This document shows positions 17,160-49,685 of a DNA stretch of 55,594 nt, piece by piece. Numbering within the stretch: position 1 is the first letter of the stretch; every line of letters begins with the position of its first letter. Source of the DNA: Octopus bimaculoides (Eukaryota). The notes under the pieces were generated by a model that worked only from the letters and a program-made list of their open reading frames with translations, did no database searches and was not told the DNA's origin. The DNA lies in NCBI RefSeq assembly GCF_001194135.2, contig NC_068984.1, positions 50,192,436 through 50,248,029 on the forward strand. The letters are read 5' to 3'. A program made the translations under genes and the position numbers.

Positions 17160-18227
17160 TTTAAAAATCGTTAAAGTGTTTCAGCTTCAAAGCTGCGGTC
17201 GTGCTGGGGTTGGATAAGCTACACCAATATTTGAAACCTCCTCTGATATGTAGCATTTGGTCAACGAGGCAGTTTGATGCCGCTGCCCTTATCTGTGTTT
17301 CTTGCCGTGAGGTAGGCTCATCTGGATCCCTTCACAGGAAGAGATCCAGTTTTGTTTTTAAGACACTTAAATCCACATCATGCAGGTCTTTTAGGCATTT
17401 TGGAAGGATATTGAAGAGCTGTGGGCCCTTGCATCCCAAGCTGCTGCAGTATCTAGTCCAGTATTTTGATTGCAATGCTGGGACCTTTGGCACTATGCAG
17501 TGGAGCCCCGTTCTGCAGTTTGAGTAACTTTCAATGCCAAAGTTTGGTACAAGACCTTCGAGCATTTTCCACTGCATATCTTTCCCGCCTTCGTTCTAGA
17601 GAGAAGAGTCTTAATTCTTTCAGTCTTTCCCAGTAGCTGATACGTTGCATCGAGACGATTTTCATAGTGTAGCTTCGTTGGATTGCTTCTAGTTCTGCCG
17701 TAGATTTTATATTGTGTGGGAACCATAGTTGGGAGCAGCAGTTTAAGCGGTTGAGGACGTATGTCCTCCGAAGGATCATCAATGTATCCTTTTCTCTTGT
17801 TTTGAAAGCTCGAAGGATCTATCCAGATAGCTGTTTGCATTTCATTACCAAATCGGTAATATACACTTGAAAAGATGCATCATGGCTCATGTCAATGCCC
17901 AGGTCACGCACTGATATTGATTCAGGGATTTCAATTCCTCCTGGGCCAGTATATTGTGTCTGCATGTCGTTTAGATTTGTGTGCTGGTAGCATAGGGTCT
18001 GGAATTTTCCTGCATTAAACTGCATGCTGTTGTTCTCAACCCGCCTGTACATTGCGTCCAACTTCTGTTGCAGATGTGCAATATTTCCAGGGTTTTGTAT
18101 TGTCTGACAGATTTTTGTGTCATCTGCATAGCTAACAAGGGTAGCTATATGAGCAGCTGAGGGCATGTCTGAGAGGGCCACTATAAATAGCAGTGGCCCT
18201 AAGACAGTGCGCTGTGGAAAACCCTTG
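17160..18227 (-). mobile_element. CR1/L2-like LINE, 5'-truncated RT C-terminus plus 3' end
   Basis: GFPQRTVLGPLLF, YADDTK, FNAGKFQ, RDLGI and LFSLERRRERY motifs, with stops and frameshifts. The 3' stem-loop is at 17177-17207 and the 5' truncation abuts (TA)n. Confidence 0.93.
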
Positions 18228-41870: not shown

Positions 41871-44800
41871 TATATGATAAGTGCTGACGTCCTTGGTCAC
41901 TCTGTTACTTCTAACAAATATTAATAAAATATATTTCGCTTTTATATTTCGTTTGCAAGAATCTTGATGTGTATTCGTGTGTTCAAACAAATCTTTTGTA
42001 TTAGGAAGGTTATTACGTCAATGGTAATGAACATGTACATACATGCATACATATATGCACGCACAAACATGCATACATACACATGCATACATATATATCC
42101 ACACACGAACATGCATCCGCAAACACACAAATATTCATACACGCATAAACCACCTGTTGCGCATGACCTTGAAGTTCATGCAATTTATGGAACAGAAATA
42201 TTCCCCCAGTGAAAATAACCTAATCATGTATCCTTTTATCTTTAATATTCCTGTGGGTCATATTTAAATCGTTAGAAGTCGTATTTGAAGTAAGAATTTA
42301 TTACTAAAGCTTATTTCAACAATTCGTCGAAATATTCATAGCTGCTACTGTCTCCATTGGCCAATTGTTAGATTGGGCACAACTATTAAATATACACATA
42401 TATACATATGAAATATCGGAACCATGTGTGCAGTTTTTAATACATTGGACCATTATAGCAGAGAGAACTTATACACAAGTTTGTTTGTAGTGTTAGATAT
42501 AGGTTAAGGTCTAGTTATGTTTATAGCAAATTTCTAAGCAAATATCAAGCTTCTTTTATATCTACGGATTTTTTAAGTAGTTTATTTTGTTGAGAGCACA
42601 TGACTTCTAACACAGAAACAGAGCACATATTTTAGGGAGGAAAAACATTGTAGACCGTATTGATCTCATTATTTGAATTATTGCATTGATAAAGAAAGGA
42701 TGAAAGGAAAAATCCACAATATCGGAATGTAAAACGTTGTAAGTAAATATTGCAAAATATTCTGTTCACCACTCTACTCTTTCTGTCCCTTCACCTCCTG
42801 ACTAAACGTGTAATACTGATGATTAAAGATGAGGAATAGTTGGTTTTGTAAAACTAAGTTTTTCCTATCAAGAAATGATGCAGCTGTATTTAATAATACG
42901 AATGTACATAACCAAGCTTTGTGCAGTTTGACAGAGTGATGCAGCATGATATAAAAGATAATAACGCAATCAACACCGCATTGATCAGTTATACTTATAA
43001 AAGCAATCATGATAAACCAACCAGAGGTTTCTATTTGGTCAACTGGCCAGTTAAAAACAGAAGACAAATTTTCGTTAAATTACAGTCTGTATTTTAGAAA
43101 ATGAAGAACATGTTAGGAATGTAATAGTATGTACTCTTAAAAATATGGAATGATCACGGCTAAAATCTTTTTGATTATATATGTCTACTCGTACAGAATT
43201 TGACCTGATGTTAACCCATTAACAATCAAGAAGGATGCGTATATGTTGTTATTTATGAACAATGTAATCTGGCAGACGAAACTGAAATTTGCTCATATAT
43301 ATGGAAATATTTGCAATCAGATAATGAACCGTTTAGCAGTAATCATAAAAAAAGCTGTTAATCGAATAATAAAAGTACAAGGAAGATACAAGAAAAATAA
43401 TGAATAATAATTGATGAATAAAAGAATGTATTGGTCAATGCCAAAAATAATGGTACTGTTTCTTTTTTTTTTCTTTGCTTCTACAGTTGCATCAAATTTA
43501 ACCTGCACAGGGGTCTAGTAAGATCGGAAAGAATCAAGTAAGATAAATTCTTTAGTTCTAACGTGATCATTATAGAGACGACTATTCGAAAATCATTTTA
43601 CAATTTGAAACTGAAATTATAATCAGTATATCACTGAAGCAAACGCTTCTATATGTTAACCTAAGTTTAAAGCGAGATGAGAATATTTCTTACCTTATAT
43701 ATGAGTGTACTGGTACTGGACTGTCTTTGCAAAGTCACTCTGTCAGCCAGAAATAGCTGATATATCTTGCTCTTACTATATCTGTCGTCTTAAAAAATGA
43801 AAAGAAAGAAGAAAAACAACAGTTTATATCATTATAGAGGACTGTCTAATAAAACAAAAGTAATACCTATAGCCTGAAGACATTTTATGATTGATCAGAG
43901 CTGACCTAGAACTTACCAGCAATATCAGAAACATCCACAATGCCCAATTTCTTACCTGCAATATCATATTTTTGAACTGATCGTTTTAAGAACAGAATGA
44001 ATACACAGAATGTCTTCACAAACAAATTGCCGTAACTATCGAAGAGACCAATGTATATGTTCTAACACGACTTCAAACCCAGTTGCTTTAAAAATATATT
44101 AAAGTCGAGGTAAAAAAAAAAAAAAACCCAGCTTTTGTGTCTGCAAGTGTGTACAAAACATTTTCAGGCGTGTTTAAAAAAAGAATCGACGAATTTCATT
44201 ATATAATCGCTCACATGGGAGACCTTTTATTTAAACTTTTGTCAGCTTATATATAACAATGTGTATAACCATGTATTCTTGTCATTGTTAATTAGAGGTT
44301 AAAGTGCATGGGATTAAATTACAAGATGCAATTTGATTATTCCGGGAAATATAGATTTCTCTATTCAGTAATGTAGTGTATAGTTACTATTTGAGGATGG
44401 TTTTGGTGTCTTTCATTTGTATAAGTTTTACAATCCTCTGTTTTTACTTCCAGGCTTCCCTTTGAAAAACAAAGAGAAATTAACTGCAAAGACTATAACC
44501 TCGTTGTCATTCATATGAGATTGCTATTTCCCGACAGAGTTCCTTTTCATGAGTTACTAAGGTAATTATTGATAATTAATGACCTACATACATACATGCA
44601 TACATACATACATACATACATACATACATACATACATTCATACATACATACATAAAACTGTTATGTGTGTGTACATGTATGTATGAATTCATCCACTCTA
44701 AGTCACACTCACATATAAATGTCCAAATACGTGTGTAAATTTTAAATAAGAAACTATGTCTAATGAAGAACATGTCTACACTGTTATAGAGACATCTTGA

Positions 44801-45439
44801 TCCCGTAGACCTATCTATTCGAGGCCAATTATTGAAAGAAAGCCAAATATTCACCAACACANNNNNNNNNNNNNNNNNNNNNNNNNNNNNNNNNNNNNNN
44901 NNNNNNNNNNNNNNNNNNNNNNNNNNNNNNNNNNNNNNNNNNNNNNNNNNNNNNNNNNNNNNNNNNNNNNNNNNNNNNNNNNNNNNNNNNNNNNNNNNNN
45001 NNNNNNNNNNNNNNNNNNNNNNNNNNNNNNNNNNNNNNNNNNNNNNNNNNNNNNNNNNNNNNNNNNNNNNNNNNNNNNNNNNNNNNNNNNNNNNNNNNNN
45101 NNNNNNNNNNNNNNNNNNNNNNNNNNNNNNNNNNNNNNNNNNNNNNNNNNNNNNNNNNNNNNNNNNNNNNNNNNNNNNNNNNNNNNNNNNNNNNNNNNNN
45201 NNNNNNNNNNNNNNNNNNNNNNNNNNNNNNNNNNNNNNNNNNNNNNNNNNNNNNNNNNNNNNNNNNNNNNNNNNNNNNNNNNNNNNNNNNNNNNNNNNNN
45301 NNNNNNNNNNNNNNNNNNNNNNNNNNNNNNNNNNNNNNNNNNNNNNNNNNNNNNNNNNNNNNNNNNNNNNNNNNNNNNNNNNNNNNNNNNNNNNNNNNNN
45401 NNNNNNNNNNNNNNNNNNNNNNNNNNNNNNATATATATC

Positions 45440-45781
45440 GAATAGCCCCCTGCATCCACGAATAGTGAAAGACCACGAATATTGGACGTGGTCCATAAAA
45501 ATGCCTGTAAATATCAAAATATAACATTATATATATATATAATATTTAATAATAATTTAATAAAAAATAAAGTAAAATGTACGGCTACTCACAGTATATT
45601 GTTATTAATAATTTAGCCTCAAAAACTGTGAAAATATATATTTTGCCACGAAAAATGCCACAAAAAATCGCGGGCGATATTTACGATTCCGCAAATATGC
45701 GGCGGTTTCCGTGAACAAATATTAGTTCCACGAATAACCGGAACCGCGAATGCCGAACCGCGAATAAGCAGAGATACACTG
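45440..45781. mobile_element. pogo/Tigger-type MITE right end
   Basis: Terminal ..AACCGCGAATGCCGAACCGCGAATAAGCAGAGATACACTG-TA, with internal CCACGAATA subrepeats. The left end is probably in the gap. Confidence 0.55.
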
Positions 45782-45906
45782 TAAATATATATATGAGTGA
45801 AAACAACTCTTAGCCACGGGAGAAGCACTATCTATTTACTGACAAAGGAGACAACCTCCCTACAACTAGCGAGAGCGTCAGATCACCAGTGATTTCGGAT
45901 AGAATT

Positions 45907-46317
45907 TGTAAAAGGTTGATAGTAACATTGAGACTTTAGCCTCTCTCTATCACCTTTCAACAAAAATATATATTAGGAGACAGTAGAACAAAGGCAGGTG
46001 TGAACAATTAACAACACAATAAAATAAGTTTTATTTTGCTGATGCATTGCTTTACAAAACTTGTACCATTCAGCCTGGTCGCCGCTGCTTAACTTGTAAT
46101 CAGCATCTGGAGATTAAGAGCTTCGTTGAGGCATCCCAGAGGAGCGAGTTGTTGTCACATCGAAGGCATCGTGCTAAAGAGGCTTAAAAAACGCGTGAAG
46201 CGCTTTAAGTACTAGTTTACTACGCATGCGTACTCGAGGGACTTCCGGGAAGGCAAGTCCCTTGCGCATGCGTAGATTGCACTTCCTTAATGGCGGCCAT
46301 AATTTCGCGCCACTACA
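45907..46317 (-). mobile_element. Solo LTR (Gypsy-like)
   Basis: 411 bp reading TGTAGTGG..CTTTTACA on minus, flanked by AATT (45903-45906 and 46318-46321). AATAAA on minus at 46030-46035; CpG-rich promoter motifs near its 5' end. Confidence 0.8.
46203..46310 (-). promoter_or_regulatory. LTR U3 promoter-like motif cluster
   Basis: TTTCGCGC (E2F-like), ATGGCGGCCAT (YY1-like), two GCGCATGCG-like motifs (NRF1-like), ACTTCCGG (ETS-like) and a TATA-like TACTTAAAG. These are motif matches only. Confidence 0.55.
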
Positions 46318-46553
46318 AATTAATCCTCATTAGTGATGTTACTCCGTTGTCTAGTGTTAAACTAACTCACTTTGTCAGTTTATAGAAGATACTATAGGAA
46401 TCAGTGGCTGATTTAGTAAAATCGTAAAGAAAAAATTATAAATTATTAAAGTGGCTAATCGCAATTTAAAAACCAAACGGCACAAGTATAATTGTCTCTA
46501 AAGTGACTAAGAGTGGACGTTTGCTCTCTCAGACTAGGGTTAAGCTAACTCAG

Positions 46554-46982
46554 CTAGCAATGCCAGTCCTGACTTGCACCCTTTGTCACTTTAGTGACGA
46601 TGATTGTACTTGTGCTTTTTGGTCTTAAATTCCGACTAGCCACTTTAATAATTCATAATTTTCACTTTACGTTTTTACTGAGTCAACTAGATTCCTACGG
46701 TATTTTTCTAAAAATTGACAGAGTTAGCTTAACCTTAGACAATGGAGTAGCGTCACTGATGAGGATTAATTCTATTATGAATCACCGACGACCCGACGCT
46801 ATCGCTTGCTGTAGGGAGGTTGTCTCCTTTGTCTGTAAACAGATGGTGCTCTGACCGTAGCTAAGAGCTGTTTCGACTCTCATTTCTAGCAATGCCCGTG
46901 CTAACTTGCACCCTTAGTCACTTTCGTTACGATTGTACGTGTGCCTTTTGGTTTTTAAATTGCGACTAGCCACTTAAATAGT
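46554..46982 (+). mobile_element. HHR-bearing unit, 1.3 tandem copies (period 332 bp)
   Basis: CTAGCAATGCC..ACTTGCACCCT..GTCACTTT..GACTAGCCACTT occurs at 46554 and again at 46886. HHR 5' half TAGCGTCA-CTGATGA-GGAT is at 46748-46766. Confidence 0.85.
46748..46801 (+). ncRNA. Type I hammerhead ribozyme, intact 5' half and mutated 3' half
   Basis: TAGCGTCA-CTGATGA-GGAT-TAATTCT-ATTA-TGAA-TCACCGACGA-CC-CGACGCTA. The paralogous 3' half at 45874-45906 (minus) restores all stems. Confidence 0.7.
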
Positions 46983-47221
46983 TTACATATACATATATAT
47001 ACACACACACGTGCCCATTTTAAGTTTATTTGTAAAGCAAACTCTTGGGAAATTGACATATTTTGAAGGATTTAAGTATTATTTACGTTGAGGAATTCTC
47101 ATAATCTTAGTTAGTAAATGTCCTTGATATCATCGGAATTATTTGGGTTGTCATTCCTAGCCTAGTAATTTCTGTTTGTGTTTTTACTGTATTTTATAAC
47201 TGTTGTTGTTATTTTTCATAC

Positions 47222-47292
<71 letters not shown>

Positions 47293-47301
47293 AAGTAGTA
47301 G
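47222..47301. repeat. (AGT)n microsatellite
   Basis: Read directly. Confidence 0.95.
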
Positions 47302-47805
47302 TCTTTTCTTTACTAACCACAAAGGCTTGACGTGATACAGAAAAAATACAAGGAAGCGTTAAAGTCTTTTACAACAAAGGATGTGAAATGAGGCAGAAAA
47401 GGAATACAAGCACGCAGGAAGGTGTGGATGATGTTTATACATACATACATATATATATATATANNNNNNNNNNNNNNNNNNNNNNNNNNNNNNNNNNNNN
47501 NNNNNNNNNNNNNNNNNNNNNNNNNNNNNNNNNNNNNNNNNNNNNNNNNNNNNNNNNNNNNNNNNNNNNNNNNNNNNNNNNNNNNNNNNNNNNNNNNNNN
47601 NNNNNNNNNNNNNNNNNNNNNNNNNNNNNNNNNNNNNNNNNNNNNNNNNNNNNNNNNNNNNNNNNNNNNNNNNNNNNNNNNNNNNNNNNNNNNNNNNNNN
47701 NNNNNNNNNNNNNNNNNNNNNNNNNNNNTATGTATGTATGTATGTATGTATGTATGTATGTATGTATGTATACATATATATATATATTTACATATACATA
47801 TACAC

Positions 47806-47838
<33 letters not shown>

Positions 47839-48778
47839 CATATATATGTGTGCGTGTGTGTGGGTGGGTGTGTTCGTATGTATGTTTGCATGTATTTATG
47901 TGTATATGTATGTATGCATGCATTTATATGTATGTATATGTGAGTGTGCATGTATGTATGTATGTATGTGTTAGAATTTAGAGACCACGGAAATTTACAC
48001 GGAAACAAAATACAGTAAAACACATTATAATTAAAACAATTTTCTTAGATAGAATTTAAAGTTCCGTCTGTATTGAACACGGTATCCAGTTTCCTGATTA
48101 TTGTCTCACTGAATTTTCTTTGTTGTATAGGTGGTATATTGCAAAGCGTTCCAATAGGAGTTGTGTTCTAGTGAACCCACTTCTCCTTGACCGTTGACAT
48201 ATAACGCTTCGCAAATTTTATCCAAAAGTTGCATCGTTTTCTTTTATGCAGTTTAAGATTAAACCCCCATTTGCATCTCGATCCGTACTTCGTATGAATA
48301 TTCTTTGGATATATTCAATATGAGTCTTACTACTGCTCTCTTCTTTTGATACATGGGTGTAAATTTAATTTCGTTCAACGCTGGGGCTAGTTTCACCTCA
48401 GAGTTCATTAGTTATTTTTTTTGTAAGATGCCGGTTCTTTCTCAACGGAAAGAGTTTCTTCTTTGAAGAGGTTGTATCCTAAATCACATCATTTCATTGG
48501 GTTTTATTTTATTTTATTCATTTATTTAATGGCAGGAAGTCAGCTGGTTTCCAAAAACCTCCAACTGGTCACTGGTTGCCATCCTCATAAGTGGACATAG
48601 TGGCATTGCTATGAGGGGGTGCTTCTTGGACATTCAGTATTAGTTGCTGTTGATGTTGTTGTTGTTGCGGTGGGTGACTATTAAATAATACCCACTTTGG
48701 TATAAAAGTTGTCGTGCTATACACATACACACATACGCAACACACACACACACAGATATGCACACACGCATATATACC

Positions 48779-48880: not shown

Positions 48881-49685
48881 NNNNNNNNNNNNNNNNNNNN
48901 NNNNNNNNNNNNNNNNNNNNNNNNNNNNNNNNNNNNNNNNNNNNNNNNNNNNNNNNNNNNNNNNNNNNNNNNNNNNNNNNNNNNNNNNNNNNNNNNNNNN
49001 NNNNNNNNNNNNNNNNNNNNNNNNNNNNNNNNNNNNNNNNNNNNNNNNNNNNNNNNNNNNNNNNNNNNNNNNNNNNNNNNNNNNNNNNNNNNNNNNNNNN
49101 NNNNNNNNNNNNNNNNNNNNNNNNNNNNNNNNNNNNNNNNNNNNNNNNNNNNNNNNNNNNNNNNNNNNNNNNNNNNNNNNNNNNNNNNNNNNNNNNNNNN
49201 NNNNNNNNNNNNNNNNNNNNNNNNNNNNNNNNNNNNNNNNNNNNNNNNNNNNNNNNNNNNNNNNNNNNNNNNNNNNNNNNNNNNNNNNNNNNNNNNNNNN
49301 NNNNNNNNNNNNNNNNNNNNNNNNNNNNNNNNNNNNNNNNNNNNNNNNNNNNNNNNNNNNNNNNNNNNNNNNNNNNNNNNNNNNNNNNNNNNNNNNNNNN
49401 NNNNNNNNNNNNNNNNNNNNNNNNNNNNNNNNNNNNNNNNNNNNNNNNNNNNNNNNNNNNNNNNNNNNNNNNNNNNNNNNNNNNNNNNNNNNNNNNNNNN
49501 NNNNNNNNNNNNNNNNNNNNNNNNNNNNNNNNNNNNNNNNNNNNNNNNNNNNNNNNNNNNNNNNNNNNNNNNNNNNNNNNNNNNNNNNNNNNNNNNNNNN
49601 NNNNNNNNNNNNNNNNNNNNNNNNNNNNNNNNNNNNNNNNNNNNNNNNNNNNNNNNNNNNNNNNNNNNNNNNNNNNNNTATATAT

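What the first reader, a model, noticed from the sequence alone, without database searches (positions are those of the whole stretch)
45791..46982. Retrozyme-like array: 332-bp non-coding unit with one hammerhead ribozyme per unit, in tandem and inverted orientation
Seen: a unit starting CTAGCAATGCC at 46554 restarts at 46886 (period 332), and an inverted copy spans 45791-46524. Combining the plus copy's 5' half (46748-46766) with the minus copy's 3' half (45874-45906) gives a canonical type I HHR: AGCGUCA-CUGAUGA-GGAU-UAAUUCU-AUCC-GAAA-UCAC(U/C)GGUGA-UC|UGACGCU. It has a 7-bp stem I, a 4-bp stem II closed by G-C, a (near-)palindromic stem III and an AUC cleavage site. No credible ORF is in or next to the unit. 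Established: metazoan non-LTR retrozymes are few-hundred-nt tandem repeats with type I HHRs that give monomeric linear and circular RNAs, and Penelope-like elements carry HHRs in direct or inverted pLTRs. Inference: this is a decayed copy of a cephalopod retrozyme or non-autonomous PLE family. I do not know whether it has been described.
Basis: partly seen in the sequence, partly recalled or inferred. Interest (0 to 1): 0.88.

Follow-up and report, generated by a model that had tools for sequence, protein, structure and literature searches.

The report
Fossil hammerhead-ribozyme retroelement insertion
This is an old, dead insertion of a short non-coding mobile element whose relatives elsewhere in the same genome carry a classic self-cutting hammerhead RNA motif; it is a new example of an already known kind of animal element, not a working ribozyme array.

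Summary
The repeat is real: a 332-bp unit (46554-46885), a partial second unit (46886-46983), and an inverted copy lying head-to-head with them.

Neither extant copy is an intact hammerhead. Rfam finds nothing, even at E<=10, and each copy has core lesions.

The reconstruction still holds. Genomic reads and contigs from related copies leave the decayed plus copy at 46775. They continue CCGAAATCGGCCGGCCGATCTGACGCCCTC, which supplies the missing half of stem II, GAAA, a palindromic helix III, the UC cleavage site and the stem I partner. Three different helix III sequences were seen, all self-complementary.

The locus has 1.3 tandem units, an inverted 5'-truncated copy, a 32-bp spacer and TA-microsatellite flanks. 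That matches published Penelope-like-element insertion architecture. No RT or GIY-YIG remnant is present.

Best reading: a fossil non-LTR retrozyme or non-autonomous PLE-mobilised element.

Caveats:
- RNA-seq gave no reads over the ribozyme and no sign of circles.
- About 55% of related copies carry C at core position U4.
- The host taxon could not be verified.

It is a new member of a known kind, of modest interest.

The parts
45776..45795 (.). Left flank: TA-rich microsatellite (…TAAATATATATAT) abutting the 3' end of the inverted copy; presumed half of the (TA)n target.
   Evidence: Sequence read directly; repeat families D2 and I9-I14.
45795..45906 (-). Inverted copy, 3' part (unit positions 215-326). 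Holds the hammerhead 3' half (45874-45906 = AAUUCUAUCCGAAAUCACUGGUGAUC|UGACGCU on the minus strand). The cleavage-site equivalent lies between 45881 and 45880.
   Evidence: BLAST 79% to unit 215-326; collinear alignment; sequence.
45907..46317 (-). Secondary 411-bp insertion of an unrelated high-copy repeat. It has TGTAG…TTACA ends, an AATAAA, and a 4-bp AATT target duplication at 45903-45906 / 46318-46321, so it looks like a solo LTR. It interrupts hammerhead loop 2 of the inverted copy. It is not part of the retrozyme-like family.
   Evidence: The alignment is gapless once it is removed. DNA read depth is about 300, against about 1 for unique parts, with sharp read breaks at 46317/46318. It is transcribed. 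No tRNA and no Rfam hit.
46318..46521 (-). Inverted copy, 5' part (unit positions 18-218), 5'-truncated. Holds the hammerhead 5' half at 46318-46345 (GGAGUAACAUCACUAAUGAGGAUUAAUU on the minus strand), with core G5>A.
   Evidence: BLAST 80%; alignment; inverted repeat pairs I2-I6.
46522..46553 (.). 32-bp spacer between the head-to-head copies. It contains an 18-nt inverted fragment of unit 168-185 (46534-46551, 17/18 match). It may be the 'tail' or extension described for PLE insertions.
   Evidence: Inverted pair I7; BLAST 94% over 18 nt; sequence. The PLE tail is described in PMC8557442, section 6. The assignment is inference.
46554..46885 (+). Full 332-bp unit: 40% G+C, non-coding.
   Evidence: No ORF or Pfam domain.
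46744..46803 (+). Decayed type I hammerhead of the plus unit. Stem I 5' strand, CUGAUGA, stem II 5' strand and loop 2 are intact. The 3' half is mutated (AUUA-UGAA-UCACCGACGA-CC|CGACGCU). The cleavage-site equivalent is at 46793|46794.
   Evidence: Sequence; alignment to the minus copy; family reads diverge from it at 46775 and supply the canonical 3' half.
46886..46983 (+). Partial second unit (unit positions 1-100) in direct tandem. Together with the full unit it gives a pseudo-LTR-like partial tandem.
   Evidence: Families D3 and D5, spacing 330-332; 84-88% identity.
46984..47010 (.). Right flank: TA/CA-rich microsatellite (TACATATACATATATATACACACACA); presumed other half of the target.
   Evidence: Sequence; family D1.

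Best explanation
The region 45795-46983 is one ancient composite insertion of a short (332-bp), non-coding retroelement. It sits in a TA-type microsatellite, and its family carried a canonical type I hammerhead ribozyme.

Shown:
- The anatomy is a 5'-truncated inverted copy lying head-to-head with a full unit and a 100-bp partial tandem unit.
- There was a later unrelated 411-bp insertion.
- Both local hammerheads are mutationally dead.
- The family consensus elsewhere in the genome has the full motif: stem I GCGUCA/UGACGC, CUGAUGA, stem II GGAU/AUCC with a 7-nt loop, GAAA, a palindromic helix III, and AUC|U.

Inferred:
- In source copies, multimeric transcripts cut themselves after C17. Two neighbouring ribozymes probably pair through their self-complementary helix III to form a double hammerhead.
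- The unit-length RNA with 5'-OH and 2',3'-cyclic phosphate ends is circularised by a host RtcB-type ligase.
- It is then copied and integrated in trans by the RT and GIY-YIG endonuclease of an autonomous Penelope-like element.
- That would explain the partial tandem, the inverted truncated copy, the spacer and the microsatellite target.

The element is therefore a fossil member of the metazoan non-LTR retrozyme / non-autonomous PLE class. At this locus it does nothing.
For: 1. Repeat geometry is confirmed. Pairwise K2P distances of 0.14-0.20 among the three pieces are compatible with one old event. Both copies share the 10-nt UCACYGRYGA helix III, unlike the 12-nt family majority.
2. Family consensus from independent data:
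   - Raw DNA reads of three runs leave the plus copy at 46775 and continue CCGAAATCGGCCGGCCGATCTGACGCCCTC (13, 8 and 7 reads).
   - Assembled contigs of two other samples give the same string (10 contigs each).
   - That string completes stem II, GAAA, helix III, UC and a 6-nt complement of the stem I 5' strand. By my rough count that is about 19 constrained positions, so chance is negligible.
3. Three helix III versions were seen, all perfect or near-perfect palindromes: UCGGCCGGCCGA, UCAUCGAUGA and UCAC(C/U)GGUGA. The C-G to U-A difference lies outside CpG context.
4. Cofolding two reconstructed ribozymes gives stems I and II plus an intermolecular 12-14-bp helix III.
5. The helix sizes (I about 6 bp, II 4 bp, palindromic III) fit the 'canonical metazoan type I' description in PMC4209133.
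6. The unit is 332 bp, 40% G+C and has no ORF. This is within the 150-450 bp, <45-50% G+C range given in PMC7229834.
7. The partial tandem, inverted 5'-truncated copy, tail and (TA)n target match PLE insertion structure (PMC8557442, section 6).
8. The family has tens of copies (ribozyme part, about 30-55) to hundreds (junction part, about 400-780) at >=80% likeness.
9. The locus is present without differences in four samples.
Against: - No extant intact ribozyme is present. Rfam finds nothing.
- About 53-58% of related copies have C instead of U at core position 4 (46757 T>C). Whether U or C is ancestral is unresolved, because the site is a CpG in the C form.
- RNA-seq raw reads from three runs gave zero depth over 46756-46835. 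RNA-run contigs show only low-depth decayed relatives and no circle-type joint.
- Multi-unit arrays with two or more ribozymes elsewhere in the genome could not be demonstrated.
- The ribozyme-bearing part is about 10-fold rarer than the junction part. Most relatives may therefore lack a recognisable ribozyme or belong to diverged subfamilies.
- The consensus strings come from 4-13 reads or contigs with 0.65-0.83 agreement.
- PLE mobilisation is inferred from architecture only. The host taxon is unverified.
Confidence: 0.68

Rival explanations
1. It is a heavily 5'-truncated copy of an autonomous Penelope-like element. The '332-bp unit' would be the 3' terminal / pseudo-LTR region of a coding PLE, with its resident hammerhead, rather than a separate non-autonomous retrozyme family.
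For: Hammerheads lie in PLE pLTRs, and PLE insertions are typically strongly 5'-truncated partial tandems with an adjacent inverted copy and microsatellite targets (PMC4209133; PMC8557442, section 6). That is exactly the architecture seen here. Retrozymes and pLTRs are reported to be sequence-related in frogs (bioRxiv 10.64898/2026.07.22.740005). Penelope elements are reported as abundant in coleoid cephalopods (PMC8967140, PMC13282606), if that is the host.
Against: - The head-to-tail period is 332 bp, not kilobases.
- The unit-end to unit-start junction is the most abundant and most conserved segment of the family (about 400-780 copies), and reads cross it without a break.
- Family contigs are collinear around the whole unit.
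- The ribozyme has the canonical architecture (helix I 6 bp, helix II 4 bp). Metazoan PLEs are described as having a minimal variant with a long helix II and short helix I (PMC4209133).
- No RT or GIY-YIG remnant was found in six frames of 45431-47220.
- The only RT-like fragment in the window is 28 kb away and matches only the general RT family RVT_1, weakly (E 0.005, below Pfam's cut-off).
Confidence: 0.2
2. It is an ordinary SINE-like or satellite-like repeat, and the hammerhead resemblance is non-functional. On this reading the family never depended on self-cleavage, for example because the ancestral core was CCGAUGA. The local direct/inverted arrangement would come from local duplication and inversion.
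For: More than half of related copies carry C at core position 4. No ribozyme-region RNA was seen. The ribozyme-bearing segment is the rarer part of the family. Rfam finds nothing in the window.
Against: - A complete three-helix hammerhead is recovered in the family consensus, with all other core positions, the G10.1-C11.1 closing pair, the A15.1-U16.1 pair and C17. That is far beyond chance.
- Helix III stays palindromic in three sequence versions.
- There is no tRNA/5S/7SL head and no poly(A) or LINE-type tail.
- The two local copies end at different unit positions (about 326-332 versus 100). That does not fit a fixed-end SINE.
Confidence: 0.08
3. It is an assembly artefact: the inverted and direct copies were mis-joined in a gap-rich draft assembly.
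For: The window has 7,753 N. The block holding the array lies between gaps at 44862-45430 and 47464-47728.
Against: A 678-nt contig assembled independently from four runs matches 46554-46969 with no differences. It extends 262 nt upstream, across the head-to-head junction and into the 411-bp insert. Raw reads at >=99% likeness also cover the stretch.
Confidence: 0.02

Closest known systems
Metazoan non-LTR retrozymes (Cervera & de la Peña 2020, PMC7229834)
   Same: A unit of a few hundred bp (332), low G+C (40%), no ORF/LTR/PBS/PPT, head-to-tail repetition, and one type I hammerhead per unit in the family consensus. Helix III is self-complementary, which suggests dimeric action. The family has multiple copies with heterogeneous sequence.
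   Different: Only 1.3 units are present here and both ribozymes are dead. No unit-length linear or circular RNA was detected in the runs sampled. Helix III is longer than the 1-2 bp stem with a 2-4-nt loop described for most metazoan examples: a 10-12-nt palindrome giving a 4-5-bp hairpin. About half of the relatives have C at core position 4. Multi-unit arrays were not demonstrated.
Penelope-like element insertions and their pLTR hammerheads (PMC4209133; PMC8557442)
   Same: A partial tandem forming a pseudo-LTR, an inverted 5'-truncated copy adjacent upstream, a short spacer or 'tail', flanking TA-type microsatellite, and a hammerhead inside the repeated part.
   Different: No RT/GIY-YIG ORF or remnant is present. 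The repeat period is 332 bp. The ribozyme has the canonical rather than the minimal PLE architecture.
Amphibian satellite 2 / axolotl retrozymes and Schistosoma Sm-alpha hammerhead repeats (as summarised in PMC7229834 and PMC4209133)
   Same: Roughly 330-bp tandem units with a type I hammerhead whose helix III is palindromic and which works best as a double hammerhead.
   Different: Those families have thousands to more than 100,000 copies and abundant transcripts. This one has tens to hundreds of recognisable copies and no detected ribozyme-region RNA. There is no sequence similarity beyond the conserved core.

Membership tests
Hammerhead ribozyme, type I (Rfam Hammerhead_1) | Conserved core CUGANGA … GAAA … H17 present in the sequence itself | tested here: not met
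   The plus copy has UGAA for GAAA and C for U16.1. The minus copy has CUAAUGA and a 411-bp insertion in loop 2. The descriptor scan found 0 hits in the window.
Hammerhead ribozyme, type I (Rfam Hammerhead_1) | Covariance-model score at or above the Rfam gathering threshold | tested here: not met
   0 hits at gathering score in the whole window. No hammerhead at E<=10 in 45400-47400. The reconstructed consensus could not be submitted to Rfam with these tools.
Hammerhead ribozyme, type I (Rfam Hammerhead_1) | Core plus three helices (open helix I; helices II and III closed) in the family consensus | tested here: met
   The 5' half comes from the window and the 3' half from paralog reads and contigs: …GCGUCA CUGAUGA GGAU-UAAUUCU-AUCC GAAA UCGGCCGGCCGA UC|UGACGC…. 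Stems I and II and the intermolecular helix III are predicted. Caveat: U4 is C in about 55% of relatives.
Hammerhead ribozyme, type I (Rfam Hammerhead_1) | Site-specific self-cleavage | not testable with these tools
   Needs in vitro transcription of the consensus monomer and dimer.
Metazoan non-LTR retrozyme | Short (about 150-450 bp), low-G+C, non-coding unit without LTR/PBS/PPT | tested here: met
   332 bp, 40% G+C. No ORF or Pfam domain.
Metazoan non-LTR retrozyme | Tandem repeats (dimer or longer) so that two ribozymes flank a monomer | tested here: not met
   There are 1.3 units and one ribozyme position per strand at this locus. Genome-wide, the junction is contiguous in hundreds of copies, but arrays with two or more ribozymes could not be counted.
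Metazoan non-LTR retrozyme | Expression as unit-length linear and circular RNA | tested here: inconclusive
   There were zero RNA reads over 46756-46835 in three runs and only low-depth decayed relatives in four RNA-run contig sets. The libraries are probably not suited to small circles, and only >=80%-alike relatives are seen.
Penelope-like element (autonomous) | ORF with telomerase-like RT and GIY-YIG endonuclease | tested here: not met
   No Pfam hit in six frames of 45431-47220. The only RT-like ORF, 17819-18181(-), is 28 kb away and matches RVT_1 weakly (E 0.005, below Pfam's cut-off).
PLE-type insertion architecture (autonomous or non-autonomous) | Partial tandem (pseudo-LTR) with an adjacent inverted 5'-truncated copy, a short tail and a microsatellite target | tested here: met
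   compared with the description in PMC8557442, section 6. The identification of the spacer as a 'tail' is inference.

The most novel reading that the evidence does not exclude
The family could be an undescribed, still partly active retrozyme lineage of this host, claimed to be a cephalopod. It would have an unusually long, fully palindromic helix III (10-12 nt, obligate or facultative double hammerhead). It would also have two co-existing core variants, U4 and C4. The C4 form might persist because uncleaved multimers are better templates for PLE-mediated integration. Diverged members not captured at 80% likeness might produce about 330-nt circular RNAs in tissues or libraries not sampled here.
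Probability: 0.15. Interest if true: 0.5.

Novelty: new member of a known kind. Interest (0 to 1): 0.3.

Why it matters
If the host is a cephalopod, this would extend hammerhead-bearing retrozyme-like elements to a clade where the searched literature describes Penelope elements but no ribozymes or retrozymes. The locus also shows, in one place, a retrozyme-like unit inserted with the full PLE-type architecture: partial tandem, inverted truncated copy, spacer and TA-microsatellite target. That is circumstantial support for the recent proposal that animal retrozymes are non-autonomous PLE derivatives. The local copy has no function.

Tried and rejected
- Rfam at gathering score and at E<=10 gave no hammerhead. 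The weak miRNA/sRNA hits are chance matches to microsatellite and to the hairpin in the 411-bp insert.
- Tandem Repeats Finder does not report the 332-bp period, because there are fewer than 2 copies.
- A specific pattern search for CTGATGAGGAT-N7-ATCCGAAA with 3 mismatches gave 0 hits. BLAST of the unit against the window found no other copies.
- Monomer MFE folds of the reconstructed ribozymes recover stems I and II, but the fold is not better than shuffles (z -0.5 to -2) and helix III is mis-paired. Thermodynamic folding alone is not evidence here.
- RNA runs show no circle-type joints. The 'goes back 323-326' joints only reflect the two homologous copies of unit 1-100 in the reference.
- I tried to decide whether U or C is ancestral at core position 4 from the CpG decay pattern. 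This was inconclusive: TG about 45%, CG about 45%, CA about 10%.
- The organism's identity is coded in the run tables, and no protein-coding gene in the window allowed a check.
- A tRNA-derived SINE origin was rejected for both the unit and the insert.
Full report
**Observation**

The sequence and the repeat search confirm a direct repeat with 332-bp spacing: CTAGCAATGCC at 46554 and again at 46886. BLAST of the unit 46554-46885 against the window gives four related segments:
- the unit itself;
- 46886-46983, which is unit 1-100 at 84% identity on the plus strand;
- 46515-46318, which is unit 24-218 at 80% on the minus strand;
- 45906-45795, which is unit 215-326 at 79% on the minus strand.

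There are no other copies in the 55.6-kb window. The 'array' is therefore 1.3 direct units plus one inverted copy, head to head. Tandem Repeats Finder does not report it.

**A missed insertion**

The two minus-strand segments are separated by 411 bp (45907-46317) that do not belong to the unit. When this stretch and one copy of AATT (45903-45906 / 46318-46321) are removed, the inverted copy aligns collinearly with the unit from position 18 to 332. The alignment has no gap at the junction GAGGATTAATTCTAT.

Genomic reads show about 300-fold depth over the insert, against about 1 for unique parts, with sharp breaks at 46317/46318. It is therefore a separate high-copy repeat that landed later, inside loop 2 of the inverted copy's hammerhead. 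Its TGTAG…TTACA ends, its 4-bp target duplication and an internal AATAAA suggest a solo LTR. I did not pursue this.

**Neither copy is a ribozyme**

- Rfam finds nothing at gathering score in the window, and no hammerhead at E<=10 in 45400-47400.
- A simple CUGANGA/stem II/GAA descriptor finds nothing on either strand.
- The plus copy keeps GGAG-UA-GCGUCA-CUGAUGA-GGAU-UAAUUCU. It then reads AUUA-UGAA-UCACCGACGA-CC|CGACGCU, so half of stem II, G12/A13 and the A15.1-U16.1 pair are lost.
- The minus copy keeps AUCC-GAAA-UCACUGGUGA-UC|UGACGCU. It has CUAAUGA (G5>A), two stem I mismatches and the 411-bp insertion.

**Is the chimera justified?**

Yes. Runs of the same (coded) organism were found. 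I laid raw genomic reads from three runs on 46700-46835 at >=80% likeness. Reads from paralogous copies follow the plus copy through …CTGATGAGGATTAATTCTAT and leave it at 46775, exactly where it is decayed. They continue with a consensus CCGAAATCGGCCGGCCGATCTGACGCCCTC (13, 8 and 7 reads). Assembled contigs from two further samples give the same string (10 contigs each).

That string supplies:
- the missing CC of stem II;
- GAAA;
- a 12-nt perfect palindrome as helix III;
- U16.1-C17;
- UGACGC, the exact complement of the stem I 5' strand GCGUCA.

Chance cannot produce this. The family consensus is a complete type I hammerhead with helix I about 6 bp (plus a possible GAG/CUC extension across a small internal loop), helix II 4 bp closed by G10.1-C11.1 with a 7-nt loop, and cleavage at AUC|U. 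These helix sizes are those described for canonical metazoan type I hammerheads (PMC4209133).

**Helix III**

Three versions were seen:
- UCGGCCGGCCGA, the family majority;
- UCAUCGAUGA, from a loose-end consensus at 45874 and from co-occurring variants at 45886/45888/45889 in about 40% of reads;
- UCAC(C/U)G(G/A)(U/C)GA in the two window copies.

All three are self-complementary. Part of the variation is CpG decay, which is symmetrical in a palindrome. The C-G to U-A difference between the second and third versions is not in CpG context.

Cofolding two reconstructed ribozymes predicts the classical double hammerhead with an intermolecular 12-14-bp helix III. Monomer MFE folds are not informative.

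**A caveat in the core**

Position 46757 (U4 of CUGAUGA) reads C in 34 of 63 raw reads. It also reads C in 53-58% of contig depth, 10-13 contigs per sample. So about half of the recognisable relatives carry CCGAUGA. Whether this is a subfamily, or whether C is ancestral and T arose by CpG decay, could not be settled.

**Copy number and fixation**

I used the depth of the contig identical to the window as the single-copy reference (11.9, 5, 37 and 53 in four samples). On that basis:
- the ribozyme 5' half has about 30-55 relatives at >=80% likeness;
- unit 76-105 has about 75-120;
- the unit-end/unit-start junction has about 400-780;
- unit 136-165 has about 2.

The junction is crossed without a break by hundreds of copies. 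Other contigs are collinear across the remaining parts. The family is therefore circularly collinear, as expected for head-to-tail units, although arrays with two or more ribozymes could not be counted.

The locus itself is present with 0 differences in four independent samples, including the head-to-head junction. It is not an assembly artefact and it is old. K2P distances between the pieces are 0.14-0.20.

**Expression**

In three RNA-seq runs of about 1.9 Gb sampled each, depth is 0 over 46756-46835 and <=0.4 over 46716-46755. DNA runs sampled to the same depth gave 20-60 reads there. Only the junction segment and the 411-bp insert are transcribed, from few start positions. That suggests particular paralogs embedded in longer transcripts.

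Contigs of four older RNA runs contain low-depth, decayed relatives, for example CUGAAAUUAGUUGGCCGAUCUGAUGG, and no circle-type joint. There is therefore no evidence for the abundant linear or circular monomers that characterise described retrozymes. The libraries and the 80% threshold limit this negative result.

**Architecture and mobilisation**

The composite has these features:
- It is flanked on both sides by TA-type microsatellite (…TAAATATATATAT | … | TACATATACATATATATACACACA).
- It consists of a 5'-truncated inverted copy next to a full unit followed by a partial unit.
- A 32-bp spacer between the head-to-head copies holds an 18-nt inverted fragment of the unit (I7).

This matches the published description of Penelope-like-element insertions: partial tandems forming pseudo-LTRs, an adjacent inverted 5'-truncated copy, a 30-40-bp tail, and a preference for (TA)n (PMC8557442, section 6).

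No RT or GIY-YIG remnant is found in six frames of the block between the assembly gaps. The only RT-like ORF of the window lies at 17819-18181(-), with a weak RVT_1 match (E 0.005, below Pfam's cut-off), 28 kb away. No tRNA-like head is present.

The best reading is a non-autonomous, hammerhead-bearing element mobilised in trans by a PLE. That makes it a non-LTR retrozyme in the sense of PMC7229834 and of the 2026 preprint arguing that animal retrozymes derive from PLEs (10.64898/2026.07.22.740005). The main rival is a very short 5'-truncated fragment of a coding PLE's terminal repeat. It is disfavoured by the 332-bp period, the abundance of the junction, the canonical (not minimal) ribozyme architecture and the absence of coding remnants.

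**Novelty**

Metazoan retrozymes are established from cnidarians to amphibians and in a mussel. PLE hammerheads have been known since 2014. In the searchable library, no paper links hammerheads or retrozymes to cephalopods, and cephalopod repeat surveys list Penelope elements without mentioning ribozymes. The host taxon could not be verified here.

This is at most a new member of a known kind, seen as a dead fossil. Interest is modest (0.3). The long palindromic helix III and the U4/C4 split are the only features that might repay a genome-wide follow-up.

Noticed in passing
window 45907-46317 (minus strand): A 411-bp high-copy repeat is inserted into the inverted copy with an AATT target duplication. 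It has TGTAG…TTACA termini, an internal AATAAA and a long perfect hairpin (CTACGCATGCG…CGCATGCGTAG, about 46219-46277). DNA depth is about 300x single-copy and it is transcribed. It looks like a solo LTR or a non-autonomous LTR-type element. No tRNA or Rfam match.
   Followed up: partly
window 46836-46925: The unit-end/unit-start junction segment is about 10-fold more abundant in the genome (about 400-780 copies) than the ribozyme segment (about 30-55). It is the only part of the unit with clear RNA coverage, coming from a few paralogs; for example, a 2,915-nt RNA contig at depth 203 contains it. It may be a conserved module shared with a larger repeat family or embedded in an expressed gene's UTR.
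   Followed up: partly
window 46757: Core position U4 of the hammerhead reads C in about 55% of related genomic copies (34/63 raw reads; 53-58% of contig depth in four samples).
   Followed up: partly
window 17493-18181 (minus strand): An ORF fragment containing YADD gives a weak RVT_1 match (E 0.005, below cut-off). It is a decayed reverse-transcriptase remnant of unassigned type, unrelated in position to the array.
   Followed up: partly
window, whole: The window is a gap-rich draft assembly with 7,753 N in many runs, for example 44862-45430, 47464-47728 and 48881-49678. Most gaps are bordered by TA/CA/TATC microsatellites. A long (AGT)27 tract lies at 47222-47302. G+C is about 35% excluding N.
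   Followed up: no
window 44000-48000: Two RNA runs of a second coded organism (organism B; X25, X26) hold 5-6% of the sampled 31-mers of this stretch. This may come from the high-copy insert or from simple repeats shared between species.
   Followed up: no
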